Positions 20,718 to 34,300 of a stretch of 64,000 nucleotides of DNA are shown piece after piece. The notes beneath the pieces were generated by a model. That model saw only the letters and a list, made by a program, of their open reading frames with translations, was not told where the DNA came from and did no database searches. The DNA is from Macrostomum hystrix (lineage: Eukaryota > Animalia > Platyhelminthes), in assembly GCA_950097015.1 (NCBI GenBank), contig CATNEN010000034.1, positions 6,634,001 to 6,698,000 of the forward strand, in the 5' to 3' direction. A program made the translations under genes and the position numbers. How positions within the stretch are numbered: position 1 is the stretch's first letter; each line of letters starts with the position of its first letter.

Positions 20718-22177
20718 GAATCAGTGAATCAGTGAACCAGTGAATCAGTGAATCAGTGAACCAGTGAGTCAGTGAATCAGTGAATCCGTGAATCAGTGAA
20801 TCAGTGAATCCGTTAATCAGTGAATCCGTGAATCCGTGAATCAGTGAATCCGTGAATCCGTGAATCAGTGAATCCGTTAATCAGTGAATCCGTGAATTCG
20901 TGAATCAGTGAATCCGTGAATCCATGAATCAGTGAATCCGTGAATCAGTGAATCAGTGAATCAGTGAATCCGTGAATCCGTGAATCAGTGAATCAGTGAA
21001 TCAGTGAATCAGTGAATCAGTGAATCAGTGAATCAGTGAATCAGTGAATCCGTGAATCCGTGAATCCGTGAATCAGTGAATCAGTGAATCAGTGAATCCG
21101 TGAATCCGTGAATCAGTGAATCCGTGAATCAGTGAATCAGTGAATCAGTGAATCAGTGAATCCGTGAATCAGTGAATCAGTGAATCAGTGAATCCGTGAA
21201 TCAGTGAATCAGTGAATCCGTGAATCAGTGAATCAGTGAATCAGTGAATCCGTGAATCAGTGAATCCATGAATCAGTGAATCCGTGAATCCGTGAATCAG
21301 TGAATCCGTGAATCAGTGAATCCGTGAATCAGTGAATCAGTGAATCAGTGAATCCGTGAATCAGTGAATCAGTGAATCCGTGAATCCGTGAATCCGTGAA
21401 TCAGTGAATCAGTGAATCAGTGAATCCGTGAATCCGTGAATCAGTGAATCCGTGAATCAGTGAATCAGTGAATCAGTGAATCCGTGAATCAGTGAATCAG
21501 TGAATCCGTGAATCAGTGAATCAGTGAATCAGTGAATCAGTGAATCCGTGAATCCGTGAATCAGTGAATCAGTGAATCAGTGAATCAGTGAATCAGTGAA
21601 TCCGTGAATCAGCGAATCCGTGAATCAGTGAATCAGTGAATCAGTGAATCAGTGAATCCGTGAATCAGTGAATCAGTGAATCAGGTAACCAGTGAATCAG
21701 TGAACCAGTGAATCAGTGAATCAGTGAATCAGTGAATCAGTGAATCAGTGAATCAGTGAATCAGTGAATAAGTGAATCAGTGAATCAGTGAATCAGTGAA
21801 CCAGTGAATCAGTGAATCAGTGAATCAGTGAATCAGTGAATCAGTGAATCCGTGAATCCGTGAATCAGTGAATCAGTGAATCAGGTAACCAGTGAATCAG
21901 TGAACCAGTGAATCAGTGAATCAGTGAATCAGTGAATCAGTGAATAAGTGAATCAGTGAATCAGTGAATCAGTGAACCAGTGAATCAGTGAATCAGTGAA
22001 TCAGTGAATCAGTGAATAAGTGAATAAGTGAATCAGTGAATCAGTGAATAAGTGAATCAGTGAATCAGTGAATCAGTGAATCAGGTAACCAGTGAATCAG
22101 TGAACCAGTGAATCAGTGAACCAGTGAATCAGTGAATCAGTGAATCAGCGAATCAGTGAATCAGTGAATCAGTGAAA
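20718..22177. repeat. 8-bp repeat (GTGAATCA / GTGAATCC)n
   Basis: Direct reading, ~1.45 kb. Confidence 0.97.
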
Positions 22178-22345
22178 CTGTCGAATCTTTTTCTCAAATA
22201 AAAACTGAAGTTTTAGAACAGACAGGCGTAAAAGATCATGACATTAAAAGTGTTTTAAAAAATTGTGATTGTCAATGGCATAAAGCCTTCAGTTCGCACT
22301 CGGGCAGCTGCGAATCAGTGACCAAACTCTCATCGCACAACACAA

Positions 22346-22767
22346 TCAGATAGGCGAAGATCGCTTCTGGCACACAAATCTCAGGTGTCTGTTGCAGGAT
22401 GCTTTCAGCCACACACCTCCGGACACCCCCGAGATGGCCGCACAGTTAAACTGCCAGCCGGAGCCTTCGGTACTCGACTGAAAGTTGCGATAGATGTCGC
22501 CGCCACTGCGACCCGTGGCACCGCCGACTGGCATGAATCGGCCGCCAGAGCGGTACATACCGATCCAGCTGTCCCCAATGACCTGCGCGAACACTTCGGC
22601 ATTCTCTAGCGAGCTGTCAATCACGGCCAGATCTCCGCCGAGGCGTCGGCGACAGAAGCGGCGGGCGTCGGCCCAGTCAGCGAGTCGTCGACTGAAGAAA
22701 TAGGCGGACAGGCCGGTGCGGGACACGGTGCAGGCCGTCCACAGGTGCGATGGGCAGCGGCTGACAG
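22346..22767 (-). CDS. Terminal exon encoding a C-type lectin-like domain (part of the gene above)
   Basis: CPSHLW...YFFS....W.DA..FC....GDLAVI.S..EN......SWIGM...NCAAI...W....C...L.FVCQK. The four canonical Cys and the WIG motif are present; EPN/QPD and WND are absent. Confidence 0.9.
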
Positions 22768-25700
22768 CTGCGGCAGAGGAAATGGGCGTTTGAAGGAATG
22801 TCAGCTGGAATGTCAGCTAGACAGTAGGAATGTCAGCTAGACAGTAGGAATGTCAGCTAGACAGTAGGAATGTCAGCTAGACAGTAGGAATGTCAGCTAG
22901 ACAGTAGGAATGTCAGCTAGACAGTAGGAATGTCAGCTAGACAGTAGGAATGTCAGCTAGACAGTAGGAATGTCAGCTAGACAGTAGGAATGTCAGCTAG
23001 ACAGTAGGAATGTCAGCTAGACAGTAGGAATGTCAGCTAGACAGTAGGAATGTCAGCTAGACAGTAGGAATGTCAGTTAGACAGTAAGAATGTCAGCTGG
23101 AATGTCAGCTGGAATGTCAGCTAGACAGTAGGAATGTCAGTAGGAATGTCAGCTGGAATGTCATCTAGAGAGTAAGAATATCAGCTAGACAGTAGGAATG
23201 TCAGTTAAAATTTCAGCTAGACAGTAGGAATGTCGACTAGACAATAAGAATGTCAGCGAGACAATAAGAATGTCAGCTAGACAATAAGAATGTCAGTTGG
23301 ACTGTCAGCTTACCTGGCCACAATGGAGAGCTGACAATGGTTCGCCTCAGGTCGGCAGTATCCAGCCTGTCGTGAAGGCAGCTCCGATCCCAGCTGAGAC
23401 CGATGATCAGCGGCCTCTTGGCCGATTGCGCCTTGAAGTAGCAGCGGCGAGACGGCGTGAGGCTGGTGACGCTAAACAGGACGGAGCGCAGGTAGTCAGT
23501 GGGCTCCTCCACAAGACTTTGGCTAAATGGGAATTTGGCGTTAAGAAGGAGCTTGTTTGAGCAGTTTGCAGCCTCCCTCCTACAGAATCCGCTCTCTCCC
23601 ATACAGAATCCGCTCTCTCCCACACAAAATCGGCTCTCTCAACTTACAGAAGCCGCTCTCTCCCATACAGAATCCGCTCTCTCCCACACAAAATCCGCTC
23701 TCTCCCACACAGAATCCGCTCTCTCCCACACAGAATCCGCTCTCTCCCATACAGAAGCCGCTCTCTCCCATACAGAAGCCGCTCTCTCCCATACAGAATC
23801 CGCTCTCTCCCACACAAAATCCGCTCTCTCCCATGAAGAATCCGCTCTCTCCCATACAGAATCCGCTCTCTCCCACACAAAATCCGCTCTCTCCCATACA
23901 GAATCCGCTCTCTCCCATACAGAAGCCGCTCTCTCCCACACAGAATCCGCTTTCTCCCATACACAAGCCGCTCTCTCTCCTCTAGAACCCAGCTCACACC
24001 ACCCAGCACCAGCTCACACCACACAGCCCCAGCTCACACCACACAGCCCCAGCTCACGCCACACAGCCCCAGCTCACACCCAAGGACCACTAGTAGATAG
24101 TGCACTATAGTAGGGGCAGAAATAGCAAACTTTTTCTCTCAGAAAGCTTCTACTTGAGTAGTCCGTGCTCACACCACACAGCCCCATCTCACACCACACA
24201 GCCCCAGCTCACACCACACAGCCCCAGCTCACGCCACACAGCCCCAGCTCACGCCACACAGCCCCAGCTCACGCCACACAGCCCAGCTCACACCACACAG
24301 CCCCAGCTCACACCACACAGCCCCAGTTCACACCACACAGCCCAGCTCACACCACACAACTCCAGCTCACGCCACACAGCCCCAGCTCACGCCACACAGC
24401 CCCAGCTCACACCACACAGCCCCAGCTCACGCCACACAGCCCCAGCTCACGCCACACAGCCCCAGCTCACGCCAGCGCCTCGCAGGTTGAGCGGCTGCCG
24501 CAGACAACCCGCAGCTCCGCCGAGTTGCCATCGGGGGCGATGCCGAGTCGGGCCACCCGCAGGCCAGCCGCTTTGGCCTCCTCGCTGACGCCGACGTCCC
24601 AGAGCTCGGCGAAGCGCATGGAGCCGGCAATGGCCGCAGGCAGCGCCAGCATCGCCTGCAGCGACGCCAGCACGGAGTGGCTCTGCAGCAGCAGCCGCAG
24701 GCTCACAAATTCTTCGCCGCTGAGATAGTCTCGCCCTCTGCTCAGGCTCGAGCTGGCATTGTTGCCATGGAAACAGAGTAGCGGCTCGATTAGCAGGCGG
24801 CGCCGCTGATTCGGCGACCCGCCCGGCTGCTCGTAGACGGTGACGGGGCAGCCGTCAAGGCTGAGGATCTGCAGCAGCCGCGGCTCCTTATCTGGCGCGC
24901 ACTCGGACATTGTGGGAAGCTTCAATCGCAGAGCCTCCAGCGGCAGGTGAAAGTGCTCAGCTGCTGAGGTTGGCTGCTGATGGGTGGCCGTGGACAGCTC
25001 GCAGTCAGCGCTGTTGGCCATCAGTGTCTCCAGCTGAATGCGCTCGAATAGAAGCCATGGACTCAGGCTTAAGTTCGAGCTGCCAAGGTGCAGACGTGAG
25101 AGACATCTCAAGTGATTAGATTCCATTAAATAAGATCGCCTATGATCCCAGCTCCGCAGTACCTGAGATCCCAATAATAAAAATCCTCAAATCCTCAGAT
25201 CCCAGCTTCGCAGTACCTGAGATCCCAATAATTAAAATCCTCAAATCCTCATATCCCAGCTCCGCAGTACCTGAGATCCCAATAATTAAAGTCCTCGAAT
25301 CCTCATATCCCAGCTCCGCAGTACCTGAGATCCCAATAATTAAAATCCTCAAATCCTCAGATCCAAGCTCCAGAGTACCTGAGATCCCAATAATTAAAAT
25401 CCTCAAATCCACAGATCCCAGCTCCAGAGTACCTGAGATCCCAACAATTAAAATCCTCAAATCCTCATATCCCAGCTCCGCAGTACCTGAGATCCCAACA
25501 ATTAAAATCCTCAAATCCTCAGATCCCAGCTTCGCAGTACCTGAGATCCCAATAACTAAAATCCTCAAATCCACAGATCCCAGCTCCAGAGTACCTGAGA
25601 TCCCAATAATTAAAATCCTCAAATCCTCAGATCCCAGCTCCAGAGTACCTGAGATCCCAACAATTAAAATCCTCAAATCCTCAGATCCCAGCTCCGCAGT

Positions 25701-28700
25701 ACCTGAGATCCCAATAATTAAAGTCCTCAAATCCTCAGATCCCAGCTCCGCAGTACCTGAGATCCCAACAATTAAAATCCTCAAATCCTCAGATCCCAGC
25801 TCCAGAGTACCTGAGATCCCAACAACTAAAATCCTCAAATCCTCAGATCCCAGCTCCAGAGTACCTGAGATCCCAACAATGAAAATCCTCAAATCCTCAG
25901 ATCCCAGCTCCAGAGTACCTGAGATCCCAACAATGAAAATCCTCAAATCCTCAGATCCCAGCTCCGCAGTACCTGAGATCCCAATAACTAAAATCCTCAA
26001 ATCCTCAGATCCCAGCTCCGCAGTACCTGAGATCCCAATAACTAAAATCCTCAAATCCTCAGATCCCAGCTCCGCAGTACCTGAGATCCCAATAACTAAA
26101 ATCCTCAAATCCTCAGATCCCAGCTCCGCAGTACCTGAGATCCCTGCACGCCCTCCAGGTCTGGCAGATGATGCGAAACTCTCCCCGAGTTCGGTCCAGA
26201 GCAGCTGAGAAGCTGTCCACCAGGTAGACCTGACTGCTCAGGTTCGCCCTGGTCAGGTTGACCTTGCGCACGTCTAGGAAGGCCACCCGTTTAGGCGCTA
26301 AGTCGGCCAGCTGGGCGGTGACAATGTCCAGCACGGACGGCCTGCTCAGGTCCACGCCGACGCTCGCGTAGGGACTGGCAGTCAGGTAGCTGTAGCCCAG
26401 CAGTACCTGGCCGTTGAAGCAGAACATTGGCTCAATATAGTACTCAGCCTTGGTGTCCAGCCGTTTGTGAATAAAGACGGTGCAGCCATCAACAGATTTG
26501 ATGGCAAAGAGGCGCATCGGGAGCGGCTTGTCGCAGCCGGGCACCTGGCGAGTCTTGCCGTTCAGGTAGCTCAGGTCGAAGTAGGTCAGCGACGGCTGCG
26601 TGATCCGCTTGCGCAATGGCCGCGGCATCCAACAGTCGTAGCTTGGCAGGTTGGCGGTCATCTCAATGTTGAAATTCTCCAGTAGCAGAGTGCCGTTTAG
26701 CTGCATGTTGTCTCTGAGGTGTTTATAGTAGACAATGGGAGATAATCTAGATCGTTTCAAAGGCGAAATATATTGATAAGGGTAGACTAGGATATGTCGA
26801 TAAAGATAAATCAGCTAGACAATGGGTGGATATACGATTAAAAAGGTAGAAAAGGTAGATAATTAGATAAAGTAGATAAGGTATACAAATAGATTAGAAA
26901 GATGGGGTAGACAAGGTTAATAAGGAAGAGAAGGTAGATAAAGTAGACAAGTTAGATAAGTTAGACAATGTAGATATGGTACACAAGGTGGACGAGGTAG
27001 ACAAGGTAGACAAAGCAGAGAAGGTAGACAAGAAAGATAAGGTAGACAAGGTAGACAATGAAGACAAGGTAGACAAGGAAGACAAGGTAGACAAGGTAGA
27101 CAAGGTAGACAAGCTCACAGCAGGGTGCGGCACTGCAGGCTGCTGTCGCAGTAGATCCGAAGTTCGGCTTCGCTTCCGTCGGGCGTCACTTTGAACTCGC
27201 CGACCTCCAGTCCGGGCAGCTGGGCGCGCTGTCGAATTCTCAGACTCCACAGCTCCATGAAGTCGACTGGTGTCAAAAGCCGTGGGTGCCTCCGCGTCGG
27301 TCTCCTCTCGAAGGATTTGCTTGACCTTCAGCAGCCACGGCGGCATTGGTCAGGGATAGTCGGAGGCGCAGGTAGGGCCCACCGCGCAGGTAGTCAAACT
27401 GGATCTGAGACTCCGAGCTGGCGCAGAATGCCGGCTCGACAAAGTGGCTGCGGCCGCCGCGCAAATTCCTGGAGTGGTGCAGCACGAGCTGACAGGAGCC
27501 AGGTAGCTGCACCGGAGCCAGCACCCGCGGGTAGGCGGCCTCGGAGCACACCAGGCGGGGCGGCGACTTCTCGCGCAGGTAGGCCAGGCTCAGCAGGTGC
27601 CCGCTGGCCAGGATCTGCTTGCTGATTGGCTCCGGTGTTAGGCAGCCGTCGTCTGGCGTTGCCATGGTAACATTGATTTGCAGCCGCTCTAGCAGAATTT
27701 CGCTGGACTGGGACAGATAATGCCTGGCGAGGGATTTCGATGCAATATTTATTTGATAGTTACTATGGCAACGAAGTTTCCATCTCAATTTTCGGGTGTA
27801 ATTGCTTTTTTATTTGCAATTGTGGTTGCTATGGCACCTGTTGTCCCAGTTGTAATTGTACTATTTTATCTCTGTTGCTATGGCAATCAAATCTGTTGCT
27901 ATGGCAAACAAATCTGTTGCTATGGCAATCAAATCCGTTGCTATGGCAATCAAATCTGTTGCTATGGCAATCCTATCTGTTGCTATGGCAATCCAATCTG
28001 GTGCTTGGAAATACTGTGGGTTGCTATTGTAAGCATTGTTTCGCATGTAATTTGACATTACGACGATTCTACAGTTCTGCTCGTTGCTGCATGTTGCTAT
28101 GGCAACATGGTAGGTTGCTTCGATAATCAAACATCGGCGCAACCCACCCCAAACTGGCGCAGGCCTCCAGCCTATCACAGTAGAGCCGTAGGTAGCCGTT
28201 CTCCTGATCGTAGGAGGAGTAGAACTCGACCCCAGTCAGGCCGCTGAAATTCGCCAACAGACCGACGCTGATCTCACCAATCCATGCGAAGGCGACGGAC
28301 CGGAAGTTGGCCAGGTGGGTGAGGTTCTGCTTGGCCGGGCCAGCGGCCTCTTCGCTGCGCAGGTTCACCTGGAAGGTGACGAAGTGGCGCCGCCTGGCAT
28401 AGTCGAAGGCCACGCTGAAGGATCCCGGGCCTTCGTCGCGCAACAGAAATAGCGGCTCAATCAGGTAGTCATCCTGCTGACTGTCCAGACGGTCCAGACG
28501 CTTCCAGAGCACCATCGGTTGATCGTGAAATTTCAAAACTTTTGAAACCTGCGGCTGTGTCGACAGCCGGCATCGACTATTTGTCTCGTTGCCATGACGA
28601 CCGAGCCAGCTACGCTGCAACTCGGAGATTGGAAACTGCGACAGGTGAGGCGTGACCGGCCTCCGGCTGGTCCAGTAGACTGGTGGCGCCAGCTGGCAGG

Positions 28701-31317
28701 CGGCGCTCGGAGCTTCGTCTGTCGAGAATGCGAAGCTGAACCGCAGCGTGTCGAATAGCAGAGTCGGGTTTGCGATGATCTGCGCACTGTGGGGGTGGGG
28801 GGTCGGCGGATGGTTGCTAAGAAGAACGATCTAACGAAGAAATCTGATCTAATTTCTTGGAATTTCAGATTTCTCAGAATTTAGATTATTTGGAATTTCT
28901 GATTTCTCAGAATTTTAGATTATTTGGAATTTCAGATTATTTGGAATTTCAGATTATTTGGAATTTCAGATTATTTGGAATTTCAGATTTCTCAGAATTT
29001 CAGATTTCTCAGAATTTCAGATTTCTCAGAATTTCAGATTTCTCAGAATTTCAGATTTCTCAGAATTTCAGATCTCAGAATTTCAGATTTTTCCGAGCTC
29101 TATTTTTTTCTTCTTAATAACAGTATTTTTCGGACTTTTTTATTTTTTTATCGGATTTATTTCCTAATTTTGTTTAGTTTTTGTTTGTCCGAGTATTAAT
29201 TCTTTTCTGATTTGATATTTCTCGTAACTTTAGATTTCACTTTCCGTTCCGAATAGCAGGCTAATTTGCTTCTTTATCTTAATTCCTTATAACAAAAATT
29301 TCTGATTCCAATAAACTTTGTTTTGTTTTGTGATGCTCCCTGATAGTTCCCTGAGAATTCCTGATATTCTGAATTCTTCGGTGTTTTCCTAGAAAATAGA
29401 GCATTTAAAAATGTCTGCCCAGTTTTATGTGCTGCTCTCGGACTCGATACTCTACTATAAGTAGCACGACAGGAAAATTATTGTATAAAGTCGTCGGGGA
29501 ATTAAAAACTCCTGCTTTCCTACTTGCCTCAACTCGTCTACAAAGGCCGCATCGGCCGCCGTATTTCGCGTGGCCATCAGGCGCAGGTGGGCCACCGACC
29601 TGTCTGTGGACAGCAGCAATCCGTCCACCTGCACACCAGCCAGCCCGGGTTGACCGTCCTCGATGCGCCAGTCCACCAGCTGAAGGTAGCGCAGCGGCGG
29701 CATCGGCCCGTTGGTGCCCGGTTGGAGACGCTTAGCCGCCTGGCTTCTGATACGCGAGTCCACCATCACCAGGCGAATGGACAGGCCCGGCCTGGCAATG
29801 GGGCATTGCGAAACACTGGTAACAGTTCGCTGTGTTTCAGCGGTGAATGTAGCTCTGAAGGTCGAGAGTTCGAATCTCCCACGGGAAAAAGAATTGTGAC
29901 ACCGACCAATTACCTGATGCTTCAGTTCTAGTCCTAACAGCAGCTGGGATAGAAATTTCAGTCCATGGACTGAATAGCTGTACACAGCCTTTAGAAGCGC
30001 CGCACAATAGCAGCGGCTGTGCCATTGGCTGTGCATTCGGCCCAAATTTTATATTCTTCTTTACTATACTCTACTGAATAGTCGGTAGCAACTAACAAGC
30101 TTGCGAAAAGCAAGAAATAGTACTGAGGCTTAAGCAAAACATTATAGACTCGATTTAAAATATTTTCCTACGCGTTCGTTCCAGAATATTCTTGACTAGA
30201 TTTAAAGTTTTTTGTTCTGATTCAATAATTTGCTATTATTTCTACTGTCAGTAGGTTGTCTCAGACATTTCCTACCAGCCGCTGGCGTTTCGAAATGCTC
30301 GCACTCCGCCGTCGCCAGCCTCCAGGCTGAGTAGCGGCTCCAGCCAGAACTCCGCCGGCTGGCGAGTCATCACAACCGCTGGAACGCCGTCGATGTAGAA
30401 GTCTCGGTGCAACCGCAGCGGCGCGGCTGTGGATCTGCCGCAGGCTGAATCTTTGGTGGAGTTGCTGACCGCATTGCTGGCAGGGGAATGCGGAGCGGCA
30501 CTCCATCTGGCAAAGTGGGCCACATCAATCTGGCTGACTCCGGGCACCACAACCGGCTTGGTCAGGTTGCTAAGGGTAACGCAGCCATCGGGCGATACGG
30601 CGTCCAGTCGAAAGAGGAAGCGTTCGAAGATTTCTAACTTTGCCTTCAACCAGCTCAGATCTGTTCGGGAAGGGAATTTCAGGGTTGCAGTTAAATACTA
30701 ATATTACTAAGTGCGTGTCCATTGCTAAACACAAGACCACACCAGCCACTCCCATTCCCCTCAACCCAGAACCTGAGCAGTGAGCAGGCCCTGTGGTTGG
30801 CGCAGTTCAGTCGCAGGTAGCCCAGCCGGCCTTCGGAGCTGATTCGCAGGCTCTCCAGTCGCCAGTCGCCGTCGGCCAGTCGGTCGTCCACCGGTGTTAG
30901 GCTGACGCTCGTCGGGTGCATGAAGGCTACGGACAAGGGCGCCGCGTGTAGCAGCTTCTCGCGAGCCCGGTGCAACAGGTCGTCATCGCGCAGACTCACT
31001 GGGAAGCTCAGATAGTGTTCACCGGTCAGCCGGTCTAGCCGGACGCACGACTCGTTGATGGTCGCCAGCGGGCCGCCGTCAGCAGCCCGGGCCGGCAGGG
31101 CCAGCAGCGGCTCCAGCAGGAAGTGGCCCCGCTGGTCGGAGCGCTGGTGCACAAACACGGGAATGCCGGCCAGCTCAAGGGTGGTCCAGTGACGCAGCTG
31201 GCCGCCCCGGTCATTCGCCCCGGCTGTCAAGCAGCTGCTGACATTGCCGACTGCGGCAGCTCCGACAGTCAGGATGCAGAGCCGGATTAGCCAGAGAGAG
31301 ATTGTCCTTAGTGGCAT
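22346..31317 (-). CDS. Secreted ~1,435-aa protein: signal peptide, six tandem ~200-aa unnamed modules and a C-terminal C-type lectin-like domain; three +1 frameshifts in this copy
   Basis: Exons 31317-30773, 30660-30276, 29791-29528, 28786-28148, 27723-27119, 26713-26135, 25079-24471, 24104-24080, 23551-23314 and 22767-22346. The first seven introns are phase 2, then 0 and 1. N-terminus MPLRTISLWLIRLCILTVGAAAVG. Each module has an invariant EP (FLLEPLL, FWLEPLL, YLIEPLF, HFVEPAF, YYIEPMF, LLIEPLL); five of six have LR...C-x5-C..L. Single extra bases near 30659, 27346 and 27276 must be removed to keep frame. Confidence 0.75.
22795..23296. repeat. 20-bp minisatellite (GCTAGACAGTAGGAATGTCA)n, intronic
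   Basis: Period of 20 read directly. Confidence 0.95.
23580..23980. repeat. 21-bp minisatellite (TACAGAATCCGCTCTCTCCCA)n, intronic
   Basis: Period of 21 read directly. Confidence 0.95.
23990..24470. repeat. 20-bp minisatellite (CCACACAGCCCCAGCTCACA/G)n split in two by a ~90-bp island holding a 25-nt micro-exon
   Basis: Arrays at ~23990-24079 and ~24168-24470; unique sequence lies between them. Confidence 0.9.
25145..26143. repeat. 54-bp minisatellite whose unit contains the exon 6 splice donor
   Basis: Unit GATCCCAGCTCCGCAGTACCTGAGATCCCAATAATTAAAATCCTCAAATCCTCA; the minus strand carries GGGATCTCAG|GTACTG in every copy. Confidence 0.95.
26790..27113. repeat. 9-bp degenerate repeat (GACAAGGTA)n, intronic
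   Basis: Direct reading. Confidence 0.85.
27865..27995. repeat. 21-bp repeat (TCTGTTGCTATGGCAATCAAA)n, intronic
   Basis: Period of 21 read directly. Confidence 0.9.
28855..29090. repeat. 17-bp repeat (GAATTTCAGATTTCTCA)n, intronic
   Basis: Period of 17 read directly. Confidence 0.9.
29826..29950 (+). mobile_element. Second, diverged tRNA-derived SINE-like copy inside intron 2 of the module gene
   Basis: B-box GTTCGAATC at 29868-29876 within AGGTCGAGAGTTCGAATCTC; shares ATGCTTCAGTTC...CAGCTG with the element at 2660-2820. The A box is poor. Confidence 0.45.
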
Positions 31318-34300
31318 TGTGGGATGCTGATTGCTTCTATGGGGAGCACCAGGCGCTGCTCCAGGCGCATTTATAGCAGTTTTCCAGCTGTGGCTGGGAC
31401 CCATGCGGCATCAGCTGATCCCTCTGAGCTATTTATAGGTCAGTACAACTATTGCGCACAAATACTGTTAGCTCGCAGCTGCTGCTGCTTGTTGATGGCG
31501 AATGGCACCCTGATAGCACGCAAGATTTGACAAAGTGTCCTTTTAGTACGAAAATTTTCATAAGGCATCATAGCTATGCACCAAAAATGCACCCTCCGAC
31601 GAGATTCACTGGAAGCTTCAAATCGATACCAATTATGTTCTTATAAGTACCTCAGCATAAGCTGTTTGTTTCCTGACTTCGATTCGAGGACTTTTGCGCA
31701 CTTGAATATTTATCCGATGCATCTATAACTGACAGCATTGTTAAGGTCCAGGACCAATGTGAGGGTCGATTACCGCAGCTGATATTTCCCTTCGTTCCTA
31801 TGGCTGAAGGGCAGTCAGCATCACGTGTTTCTCTCTCTGAAAATGGCACTGCTAACAGCTTGCAGATCTGCATTGCAGTGCTGCTATTTTGGTCACCTAC
31901 GTCACTTTTGGAATGCTTATATAGCATTGTTTTCCGCTGATCTTTTATTGGGACGGCATTTTGCAACGCTCGAAGAATGATATCTGCGTTCTTTCCTACC
32001 AAAGTCAGATATGCGATTCTTGCTTGTTGCTATTAAGCTTTATAAGTACAACAGGATGTTTTAGAGGCTATTTTCCTACTACCGCATGAGGCATTAGGGA
32101 GCTGTTAATATAATTCGTATTTGAAATTCGATGGATTTCCTATTAGACGGAAATTCTTAGCTAATTGCTAGGCACGTGACAATGTAAATACATTTTGTAC
32201 TTTGTACAGTATTTCACGTGTAAATTCCAGATTGAAGTTCTTGGAAGTGGTCATGATGCGTAATCCTTCTACTTGTCGAAATTGTGCGTGAGTTTCCTCA
32301 CAATACGAAAGCGTATTCATATAAGTAAGTGCCCGTAATTTAGAAAACCACTAATTATAAAATAGATTTTAGGCTCGCTTTAAGAATAAACTTTCCGTGT
32401 ATTCACAAACAAAAATGTTACTGAAGCAGAGAGAACACTCTGCTTAGCTTTTGTAGCATATGTTCTCTCTGCATGAGTAGCACAACAAACAATTAATGCA
32501 TGAAATTAATCTCCTCAACGCATTTTTAAGTAAGAACCAGCTATGAACATTTTTTCTGCATTGTTGCTTCCTTTTTTAGCAGCCCTTACTGTGGGAAGAA
32601 TCAATTATATATTACCAATATACAGCGAGCAAACTTATGCAAATTTTCCGGCTTAAAAATGAACGAAAAGTGGTTATATCAACAAAAAATTACTTTATCT
32701 CTACTAGGAGCTAGATTTATTAAAGTAGAAATAACTTTGTAATGTTTTAAAATGTTTTTTATAGTTACTGTTCTGAAAAAAACTTTTTCATGAACATTTA
32801 CTTTCTATCCGAGTAAATAAAAATATTTATACTTTTTAACATTGTCTTGATTTTGCCATTTTTTAGCAAGCAAGTTATAACATTGACTTTCGCTTTTATC
32901 TTTTATCAAAAGTTCTGCAACGAATCTTACCATTGCCAAATTTGAAATTAGAATATATCACCCTATACTAAATTTGTTAGTCATATGTATTATAATACTA
33001 AAAGCTAACACTAAGCTAAAAAATCTCACATTTTCTTACACGATATTCTGAATTGAACTTCTGATTTATATCCATACGGATGATCCATCCGTACTGATTA
33101 CACATCGTTACCAGTCGCTGTACCAGCGTAGGATACATATGCTCTACGCTTGTGCTGATTAATGTGCAATAATAATTTCAACTGCTTGCTTTATTAGCAA
33201 AAATGGAAACAGTGCTGTTCTACAATATTCGCTTGTTTAAAACTATGTTAGCAAAATTGATATCTTGTCAGTTTCTTTGACAAAAATATAGCTGTATGCT
33301 AGCTGAAAAGGCTAAATAAATTAACATTATAAGCTTAGAATAGTATTTAAATAGCTATTGACAAAGTTATGAAGGTATTACTAGTATACCAATGCTTTTA
33401 ACCTTTTATAGACAAAAAATTGCATTCACCTTTTTCAGACGTAGTTAGGCCTATTGTTATTATTTTTGCTGAATTATAAATTATGAATTATGAATTATGA
33501 ATTATGAATTAAAAGCGAAAACATATAACTTTTTTTCGAACTCATGAATGCGTGCAGACCTACAGCCGAACTACTGCAAATGAATACATTTTTGTCATGT
33601 TCAATTTGTTCAGCTTTTCTTGTTGCAGCATTTAATAATTTTAATAAGCTAGTCAAAAGATATCCATGGCTACCAGCCTAGCAAAAGATCGAGCAGCTCG
33701 CAACCTCAGGAAGCAGAGCACAGCTCCACACGGCATGTCAAGCCTTCAGCAGCTGAAGCCTGCTGCAGGGGGGAAGTACAACAAGTAAGTGGCATTTTTG
33801 TATTAAAGAAACTGTTGCTTCTATATTACTTACTTATTTCTGGTCACACTAATTGCTGTGAGACAAATTTAATATTTAATTACAGTAGTCTTTAATCAGA
33901 CAAAATATAACATGAATTGTCTCAATCTATACCCATACAAAAACTGCATTTTACAGCGAGGAAAGTTTTCCGGATGAAGTTTTCGACAGTGACGAAAGGT
34001 TGCAATTAAAATATATTAGATTGTTTTGAATATAGCCATATTGTAAAACGAGATTTAAGCACCAAAATGTATATAAAACAATTTAAGTTATTTAGCTTGC
34101 CCCCCACAAAGCACTGAAGAGCATATGAATTTTTTGCACATTGTCGATAATTTTGCGATTGAATTCGCGTTATAACAAAAACAAGAATAGTTGCTCGATT
34201 TCAGTTAATAAACCCTCTGGTTTCGCTGCTGAAAGTGAGTGAATAAAAGTGCATGTACTAGTATGTTTCGATTTTTTGCTGCCTTAATATGTTCAATTAT

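What the first reader, a model, noticed from the sequence alone, without database searches (positions are those of the whole stretch)
22346..31317. Hidden ~1,435-aa secreted protein: six copies of an unnamed ~200-aa module capped by a C-type lectin-like domain
Seen in the sequence: about nine apparently unrelated minus-strand ORFs join through consistent splice sites into one reading frame, once three single-base insertions are removed. It starts with a signal peptide. Each module runs C...(DG)xP(V/M)xx(H/Y)...[FYL]xxEP[LAM][LF]...DY/DR...hxhxhxL...(S/P)VxFxxh...hxhxxhxhxxD...LR[LI]xC-x5-CxxL, then LL[FL]ExhxF across the junction. Residue spacing across four of the junctions is identical, with (F/L)(E/D/N) at positions 12-13. 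Several N-glycosylation sequons occur (NVS, NES, NET, NLT, NGT, NAS). Module 2 alone has lost the C-x5-C pair. The CTLD lacks EPN/QPD and WND, so it probably does not bind sugar in the Ca2+-dependent way (established CTLD rules). Inference: a lineage-expanded extracellular module used for recognition, adhesion/mucus or defence. From memory only and unverified, the pattern resembles an uncharacterised N-terminal domain of some Daphnia-type secreted proteins (IPIYKH...FYYAPIA...LSC....C..LA).
Basis: partly seen in the sequence, partly recalled or inferred. Interest (0 to 1): 0.88.

Follow-up and report, generated by a model that had tools for sequence, protein, structure and literature searches.

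The report
Flatworm six-module secreted lectin gene
The scattered open reading frames are one real, expressed flatworm (Macrostomum) gene for a roughly 1,417-residue secreted protein with six copies of an unnamed domain and a C-type lectin-like end; the domain has no Pfam family or solved structure and sits in front of other lectin heads in related proteins, but its function is unknown.

Summary
Transcriptome contigs from four runs join six of the minus-strand pieces through GT/GC..AG introns into one mRNA. It has a signal peptide, six homologous modules (pairwise z up to 35) and a C-type lectin-like domain (Pfam 1e-9) without QPD/WND.

Macrostomum lignano has annotated but uncharacterised orthologues (PAA78696.1, 64% identity) with the same nine exons, so the gene is not new, only unnamed. 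The module has no Pfam or PDB sequence match. A profile search of 1.84 billion representative proteins found 14 hits. The named ones are all Macrostomum, and seven of the 14 carry one or two modules before a fibrinogen domain.

The AlphaFold model of one domain is confident (pLDDT 93). It matches nothing solved (best Z 5.3).

Function is inferred only: a secreted, multi-domain recognition or adhesion protein. Earlier notes of this scan describe what is probably the same domain on fibrinogen genes elsewhere in this genome.

The parts
30773..31325 (-). Exon 1: 8-nt 5' UTR, ATG at 31317, signal peptide (aa 1 to about 23, 31249-31317) and the core of module 1
   Evidence: Contigs of three runs start at 31325 and end this exon at 30773. 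The N-terminal stretch is the only strongly hydrophobic 19-mer in the protein.
30275..30660 (-). Exon 2: trailing helix, strand and Cys-loop linker of module 1, and the first half of module 2. The assembly carries one extra base at 30635/30636.
   Evidence: Joint 30773|30660 and one base left out in three runs. The frames on both sides of the break match the orthologues.
29528..29790 (-). Exon 3: second half of module 2, the only module without the C-x5-C pair
   Evidence: Joints 30275|29790 and 29528|28786, the latter with a GC donor; alignment.
28147..28786 (-). Exon 4: module 3
   Evidence: RNA joints; profile hit 3e-75.
27119..27722 (-). Exon 5: module 4. The assembly carries two extra bases, at 27338/27339 and 27267/27268.
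   Evidence: Both bases are left out in all four runs, including run X2 of the genome's own study. The 23 codons between them match the orthologues only in the corrected frame.
26135..26713 (-). Exon 6: module 5
   Evidence: RNA joint 27119|26713; the contig continues past 26135; profile hit 6e-78.
24471..25079 (-). Exon 7 (predicted): module 6
   Evidence: Canonical AG/GT sites that keep the frame. The same exon is present in the M. lignano locus.
23314..23522 (-). Exon 8 (predicted): trailing helix, strand and Cys-loop of module 6, with no further core. The alternative acceptor at 23579 would add 19 aa.
   Evidence: The acceptor at 23522 reproduces the junction seen in the orthologues (CEAL-VQSL..EEPTDYL) and removes 19 gap columns.
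22346..22767 (-). Exon 9 (predicted): long-form C-type lectin-like domain, with the TGA stop at 22346-22348
   Evidence: Pfam Lectin_C 1.3e-9. PDB sequence hits to ASGPR1, PLA2R and the mannose receptor. QSS aligns with QPD and WLK with WND.
22147..22345 (-). Probable 3' UTR, running up to the 8-bp tandem array at 21000-22176
   Evidence: Arithmetic on the length of the 4,461-nt contig and Tandem Repeats Finder. Inferred.

Best explanation
Shown: this is one transcribed nine-exon gene of a Macrostomum flatworm. It encodes a secreted, probably N-glycosylated protein of about 1,417 aa. The protein has a signal peptide, then six tandem copies of an unannotated domain, then a long-form C-type lectin-like domain that lacks the Ca2+/sugar motifs. 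Each domain copy is a beta-rich core, a helix that starts at C-x5-C and one more strand, followed by a disulfide-loop linker. The three frame breaks in the window are absent from RNA and are most likely residual errors of a long-read assembly. The six positions are old: each is 60-74% identical to the same position in M. lignano but only 23-35% identical to other positions. The gene is under purifying selection (dN/dS about 0.29). Inferred, about 35-40% likely: the protein is a soluble multivalent recognition or adhesion molecule. In this reading the six-domain array is a rigid stalk, or a set of secondary binding or oligomerisation surfaces, and the terminal CTLD binds a protein or a non-canonical glycan. 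The argument is that the same domain precedes fibrinogen-related heads in Macrostomum and, by predicted structure, precedes C1q and bulb-lectin domains in other small invertebrates. That placement resembles the N-terminal parts of humoral lectins.
For: Spliced contigs and the three missing bases. Open frame after correction. Module homology. CTLD. Full-length collinear orthologues at 64% and 48% identity with the same exon structure. Position-by-position orthology of the modules. dN/dS of 0.17-0.48 per module. Sequon excess and a single N-terminal hydrophobic segment. Only 14 profile hits in 1.84 billion representatives, seven of which carry the module before a fibrinogen domain: Pfam Fibrinogen_C in P0003, P0004, P0006, P0010 and P0011, source names for P0007, and the fibrinogen-type motif read by eye in P0009. 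Confident domain model, pLDDT 93.2 and pTM 0.86. AlphaFold DB matches at TM 0.66-0.71 and rmsd 3.1-3.7 A over about 160 residues to entries named C1qdc1 protein and bulb-type lectin domain-containing protein.
Against: No data on tissue, ligand or phenotype were obtained. The CTLD lacks QPD/EPN and WND in all three orthologues, so sugar binding is doubtful. The six positions are individually conserved rather than diversifying, which suits a structural matrix or mucus protein equally well. Exons 7-9 rest on prediction, the orthologues and contig length, not on laid reads. No independent DNA run was available to settle the three extra bases. The structure was modelled on the M. lignano orthologue (73% identical in that module) from only 41 sequences. 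The organisms of the AlphaFold DB hits were not shown by the tool.
Confidence: 0.6

Rival explanations
1. It is a structural extracellular protein (mucus, rhabdite or rhammite content, eggshell, adhesive or seminal-fluid component) in which the repeated domain is a building block and the CTLD is a cross-linking end, rather than a recognition molecule.
For: Six stably conserved, non-diversifying module positions. Moderate purifying selection. A non-canonical CTLD. A more distant orthologue carries a mucin-like Pro/Ser/Thr repeat after its signal peptide. Macrostomum adhesive proteins also combine a C-type lectin domain with other modules (PMC6410801).
Against: The same domain is repeatedly paired with lectin-type heads: fibrinogen, and by predicted structure C1q and bulb lectin. 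That pattern is more typical of humoral recognition proteins. The protein has none of the low-complexity or highly charged regions of the known adhesive proteins.
Confidence: 0.3
2. The copy in this window is a recent pseudogene with three true frameshifts, and the transcripts come from another intact copy or from another haplotype or strain.
For: The three extra bases are not in homopolymer runs. No independent DNA run could be laid: the runs labelled 'DNA?' hold spliced contigs.
Against: Run X2, from the genome's own study, differs by a single substitution over about 1.8 kb yet lacks the two extra bases that it covers. The frames on both sides of every break are conserved in the orthologues. 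The 2023 assemblies of the two candidate source species (a guess, not established) were made from PacBio reads with canu and then polished, which can leave indels (PMC10468722). No second copy lies in the window.
Confidence: 0.1
3. The ORFs are separate small genes or chance ORFs.
For: Each ORF is closed by stops in the raw window.
Against: One 4,461-nt contig spans them with canonical introns. Full-length orthologues exist in two other species.
Confidence: 0.01

Closest known systems
Macrostomum lignano PAA78696.1, PAA72931.1 and PAA78245.1 (BOX15_Mlig001890g2, Mlig001546g1, Mlig001894g2), named 'hypothetical protein' or 'C-type lectin domain-containing protein'
   Same: Full-length collinear orthologues of 1,436-1,438 aa at 64% identity. 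They have the same nine exons, the same six modules position by position, and the same CTLD without QPD/WND.
   Different: They belong to another species. They are annotated only by their CTLD. No paper in the searched library mentions these loci.
Macrostomum lignano fibrinogen C-terminal domain proteins (PAA89661.1, PAA87967.1, PAA91421.1, PAA70159.1 and others)
   Same: They carry one or two copies of the same module, including the trailing helix, strand and Cys-loop, directly after a signal peptide.
   Different: The head is a fibrinogen-related domain rather than a CTLD. They have 1-2 modules rather than 6 and are only 22-29% identical to the window's modules.
AlphaFold DB entries E9GCS6 ('C1qdc1 protein'), E9GDU2, E9HD85, A0A1W0W8S9 ('bulb-type lectin domain-containing protein'), A0A1W0WJ20 and A0A818BRW5/A0A822F3G5. 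From memory of the accession ranges these are Daphnia pulex, a tardigrade and bdelloid rotifers; the tool did not show the organisms.
   Same: Same predicted fold over about 160 residues: TM by query 0.66-0.71, rmsd 3.1-3.7 A, E 1e-7 to 3e-8. In most hits the matched region is at the N-terminus; in A0A1W0W8S9 it is internal, at 232-392 of 488.
   Different: Only 12-17% identity and no direct sequence-level link was tested. The other domains differ (C1q, bulb lectin). There is a single copy rather than six.
Humoral chimeric lectins: mollusc FREPs (IgSF + fibrinogen), ficolins and collectins (collagen stalk + fibrinogen or CTLD), and the mannose-receptor family. The comparison rests on established knowledge of these families.
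   Same: General plan: a signal peptide, a non-lectin N-terminal part and a C-terminal lectin-type head.
   Different: The stalk here is a globular domain with no Pfam or PDB relative. There is no collagen, coiled coil or Ig. The CTLD lacks the Ca2+/sugar ligands. Nothing shows an immune role.

Membership tests
C-type lectin-like domain (Pfam PF00059, CTLD fold) | Significant match to the Lectin_C profile over the full domain | tested here: met
   39.1 bits against a cut-off of 22.6, profile positions 4-107 of 107. PDB sequence hits to ASGPR1, PLA2R and MRC2.
C-type lectin-like domain (Pfam PF00059, CTLD fold) | Conserved cysteines of the long form: an N-terminal pair plus four core Cys | tested here: met
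   Cys at 1301, 1309, 1335, 1405, 1421 and 1429 of the 1,436-aa model, in the contexts CPSHLWTAC, RRFC, FNCAA, ASC and FVC.
Ca2+-dependent carbohydrate-binding C-type lectins (sensu stricto) | EPN or QPD tripeptide and WND motif forming Ca2+ site 2 | tested here: not met
   In the alignment to ASGPR1, QSS stands for QPD and WLK for WND. By eye, the orthologues read WLP and WVK at the place of WND.
Fibrinogen-related proteins (FREPs, ficolins) | C-terminal fibrinogen-related domain (PF00147) | tested here: not met
   No Fibrinogen_C hit in any exon of this gene. It is present only in paralogous module-bearing proteins of M. lignano.
Any curated Pfam family, for the repeated module | Profile match at E of 1 or less | tested here: not met
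   No families for any of the eight module ORFs at E up to 1. None in the module regions of P0016, P0002, P0003-P0011 or P0014.
Any solved fold, for the repeated module | Sequence or structure match to a PDB chain | tested here: not met
   Profile against PDB sequences: 0 hits at E up to 10. Foldseek TM of 0.31 or less. VIA-align wide best Z of 4.8 and 5.3, below the tool's usual chance level of 7-8. The tool itself says a missing match does not prove that the fold is new.
Macrostomum module family (unnamed; defined here by the profile of alignment A1) | Core with ..G(C)x..V..R....EP(L/F)(L/F)C.., DY, SVxF(M), LRxxC-x5-CxxL, then a helix and the strand LLFExhxh | tested here: met
   Six copies in the window protein at 9e-51 to 6e-78. 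Module 2 lacks only the Cys pair.
N-terminal domain of Daphnia, tardigrade and rotifer proteins with C1q or bulb-lectin domains | Common ancestry shown by sequence as well as by fold | tested here: inconclusive
   The fold match is clear. The only sequence link found is to a metagenomic family (P0014, P0032-34; hhalign 96.3%, E 1.8e-9). The AlphaFold DB sequences could not be fetched for a direct test.

The most novel reading that the evidence does not exclude
The module is a widespread but unrecognised invertebrate 'lectin-partner' domain. In this reading it is an ancient extracellular fold that flatworms, cladocerans, tardigrades and rotifers place next to four different recognition heads (CTLD, fibrinogen, C1q, bulb lectin). 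It would serve as the oligomerising or effector-recruiting stalk of a humoral recognition system, in the role that collagen stalks or Ig domains play elsewhere. The six-copy protein here would be its most elaborate form.
Probability: 0.25. Interest if true: 0.75.

Novelty: new variant of a known kind. Interest (0 to 1): 0.55.

Why it matters
The result defines a compact, confidently modelled extracellular domain that has no Pfam entry and no detectable solved relative. In flatworms it recurs next to lectin-type heads, and by predicted structure it does so in Daphnia-type, tardigrade-type and rotifer-type proteins as well. Naming it would annotate at least fourteen protein clusters that are currently 'hypothetical'. 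It would also give invertebrate immunologists and matrix biologists a testable candidate for the non-lectin half of chimeric lectins.

Tried and rejected
Language-model look-ups of module 5 and of the P0014 domain gave only sub-threshold, unrelated hits: pentapeptide and RRM-like clusters at 0.87 or less. The ESM Atlas shape search found nothing above TM 0.45.

The search for homologous proteins with the 41-row domain alignment found nothing in its length window. With P0014 as query it found only three unnamed metagenomic relatives.

tblastn of all modules against the window found no second copy.

The paper search for the M. lignano locus names returned nothing. The Macrostomum adhesion paper concerns other, much larger proteins. 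'C1qdc1' in Daphnia papers is only a marker name.

The high-depth 36-nt piece in intron 2 is not a tRNA by ARAGORN and matches no Rfam family.

A bacterial-type promoter and terminator scan upstream was uninformative for a eukaryote.

I considered that the intronic minisatellites, which repeat the donor sites, might give in-frame alternative donors. I rejected this because read-through meets a stop after 7 codons in intron 6 and after 1 codon in intron 7.

A SEA-like or ferredoxin-like relationship for the C-terminal half of the domain was considered. It rests only on weak VIA matches (Z 4-5 to ArgR and BMC-type alpha/beta domains), so it is not claimed.
Full report
**What is in the sequence**

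The region 22.3-31.4 kb holds a run of minus-strand ORFs separated by minisatellite-rich stretches. Composition and structure are eukaryotic. Only the last ORF has a Pfam match, to Lectin_C at 1e-9. The eight others have none at E up to 1.

**RNA evidence**

Eleven public runs of one organism hold the exons, and a twelfth, a metagenome, holds a small part. I laid four of them on 26100-31450. All four, including one labelled 'DNA?', hold spliced contigs, so they are transcriptomes.

One 4,461-nt contig joins 31325-30773, 30660-30275, 29790-29528, 28786-28147, 27722-27119 and 26713-26135. It then runs on for 1,439 nt beyond the stretch that was laid. The skipped parts end in GT..AG on the minus strand, except intron 3, which is GC..AG.

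The contigs lack one base at 30635/6, at 27338/9 and at 27267/8. The sites are not homopolymers.

With the three bases removed, the six exons read open from the ATG at 31317 for 1,004 codons. The frames on both sides of each break, and the 23 codons between the two breaks in exon 5, match the orthologues.

Run X2 belongs to the same study as the genome. It differs from the window by a single substitution yet lacks the two extra bases that it covers.

If the window comes from one of the two 2023 Macrostomum assemblies, which I could not establish, it was built with canu from PacBio reads and polished with Arrow and pilon (PMC10468722). I therefore read the three bases as residual assembly errors. 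A pseudogenised copy remains a 10% rival, because no independent DNA run could be laid.

**Rest of the gene model**

Exons 7-9 are predicted from canonical sites that keep the frame. The M. lignano locus has nine exons with boundaries at the equivalent residues.

The acceptor at 23522 reproduces their junction, CEAL-(V/A)QSL..EEPTDYL. With it, the unlaid 1,439 nt would end at 22147, about 30 nt into the 8-bp tandem array, where a k-mer assembler would be expected to stop.

The preferred product is 1,417 aa; the alternative is 1,436 aa.

**The protein**

- The N-terminal segment is the only strongly hydrophobic 19-mer, so the protein is secreted and not membrane-bound.
- There are 15 N-X-S/T sequons in the 1,436-aa model against 6.0 +/- 2.2 in shuffles. 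One of them, NCS 1213, lies in the 19 residues that the 1,417-aa model drops.
- The six modules are homologous. Pairwise z-scores reach 35 and every module is connected to the others. Each hits the module profile at 9e-51 to 6e-78.
- Exon 8 carries only the part that follows each core: helix, strand and Cys-loop.
- The CTLD is the long form with six Cys. Aligned to ASGPR1 it has QSS for QPD and WLK for WND. By eye, the orthologues read WLP and WVK at the place of WND. Canonical Ca2+-dependent sugar binding is therefore unlikely.

**Relatives**

A profile of the window's modules was searched against 1.84 billion representative proteins and found only 14 hits. Every hit that carries a name is from Macrostomum lignano.

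Three near-identical M. lignano paralogues are full-length orthologues at 64% identity. One is PAA78696.1 (1,436 aa), annotated 'hypothetical protein / C-type lectin domain-containing'. An unnamed transcript contig (P0002, 1,462 aa) is a 48% orthologue with a Pro/Ser/Thr repeat after its signal peptide. The window is therefore from another Macrostomum species. M. hystrix or M. cliftonense would fit the assembly size and contig number, but that is a guess.

Module positions are orthologous one to one. Identity is 60-74% to the same position in M. lignano and 23-35% to other positions. The six-fold array therefore predates these species and does not evolve in concert.

NG86 dN/dS against M. lignano is 0.29 overall and 0.17-0.48 per module, with dS of 0.88 overall and 0.67-1.18 per module.

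Seven further hits carry one or two modules after a signal peptide and before a fibrinogen C-terminal domain. Five were checked with Pfam. P0007 rests on its source name. P0009 rests on the fibrinogen-type motif read by eye in its sequence.

Earlier first-reader notes of this scan (s1-262256, s1-262294) describe an unrecognised, duplicated N-terminal domain on fibrinogen genes elsewhere in this same genome. That is probably the same domain. I did not test those loci.

**Fold**

I modelled the M. lignano fifth module, which is 73% identical to the window's.

- With flanks: pLDDT 82, pTM 0.80.
- As one domain: pLDDT 93.2, pTM 0.86.

The domain has about nine strands and two helices. The second helix starts at the C-x5-C motif and is followed by the strand LLFExhxh. 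The structural domain is therefore offset from the exon.

Two Cys pairs are present or absent together across modules: the GC and EPxxC cysteines, and in most modules the C-x5-C pair. This suggests two disulfides (inference).

No solved structure matches:

- Profile against PDB sequences: 0 hits.
- Foldseek: TM of 0.31 or less.
- VIA-align wide: best Z of 4.8 and 5.3, below the tool's stated chance level.

AlphaFold DB clusters do match, at TM 0.66-0.71 and rmsd 3.1-3.7 A over about 160 residues. The hits include E9GCS6 ('C1qdc1 protein'), E9GDU2, E9HD85, A0A1W0W8S9 ('bulb-type lectin domain-containing'), A0A1W0WJ20, several A0A81x entries and two M. lignano proteins. Most hits match at their N-terminus; A0A1W0W8S9 matches internally.

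From memory of the accession ranges these are Daphnia pulex, a tardigrade and bdelloid rotifers. The tool did not show organisms. Daphnia papers do use the name 'C1qdc1-like protein' beside DAPPUDRAFT genes.

A metagenomic family (P0014 and three relatives) is homologous by profile-profile comparison, at 96.3% probability and E 1.8e-9 over 149 columns.

**Interpretation**

The gene, its product and the domain family are shown. The function is not.

The domain sits next to four kinds of lectin-type heads, and the protein is secreted and probably glycosylated. For these reasons I favour a soluble multivalent recognition or adhesion protein with the six domains as stalk or secondary binding surface (about 35-40%). 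A structural matrix, mucus or reproductive role is nearly as likely (about 30%). The position-specific conservation and the non-canonical CTLD fit either reading.

**Novelty**

The gene already exists in public databases as an unnamed orthologue. What appears undescribed is the domain. It has no Pfam family and no solved relative, no paper on these loci was found, and its partnership with lectin heads is not described. I rate the finding a new variant of a known kind (chimeric secreted lectins), with interest 0.55.

Noticed in passing
window 25144-26144 (intron 6) and 24167-24474 (intron 7): The minisatellites in introns 6 and 7 begin exactly at the splice donors and repeat them. There are 12 exact copies of CTCAG|GTACTG at a 54-bp period and 8 of GGC|GTGAGCTGGGG at a 20-bp period. 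RNA uses the first copy in intron 6. Read-through meets a stop after 7 codons in intron 6 and after 1 codon in intron 7, so later copies would not give in-frame products.
   Followed up: partly
window 29958-29993 (intron 2), with flanks 29830-29900: A 36-nt piece containing the palindrome TCAGTCCATGGACTGA has word depth of about 430-660 in all four transcriptomes and occurs in many contigs with different flanks on both sides. About 70 nt upstream on the + strand is a tRNA T-arm-like GGTCGAGAGTTCGAATCTCCC. This is probably a dispersed SINE-like element. ARAGORN finds no tRNA there and Rfam finds no match.
   Followed up: partly
window 26472, 27203, 27276, 27357, 27438, 28216, 28366, 28450: Eight substitutions separate the RNA contigs from the window. 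Five are synonymous and three are not: I893V, F760S and V784A. The 2020 runs share six of them, so they come from a slightly different line.
   Followed up: yes
L001 (ENA metagenome ERZ19053313, scaffold_10855): A 5.7-kb metagenomic contig carries at least two tandem, intron-poor genes (P0014, P0033) for single-domain relatives of the module. In P0014 the domain is followed by a Ser-rich tail and a hydrophobic C-terminal stretch. The source organism is unknown.
   Followed up: partly
I did not examine it, and no link to the lectin gene is known.
   Followed up: no
window 21000-22176: A 147-copy array of the 8-bp unit ATCAGTGA lies directly after the probable 3' UTR of the gene. The transcript contig appears to end about 30 nt into it.
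   Followed up: no
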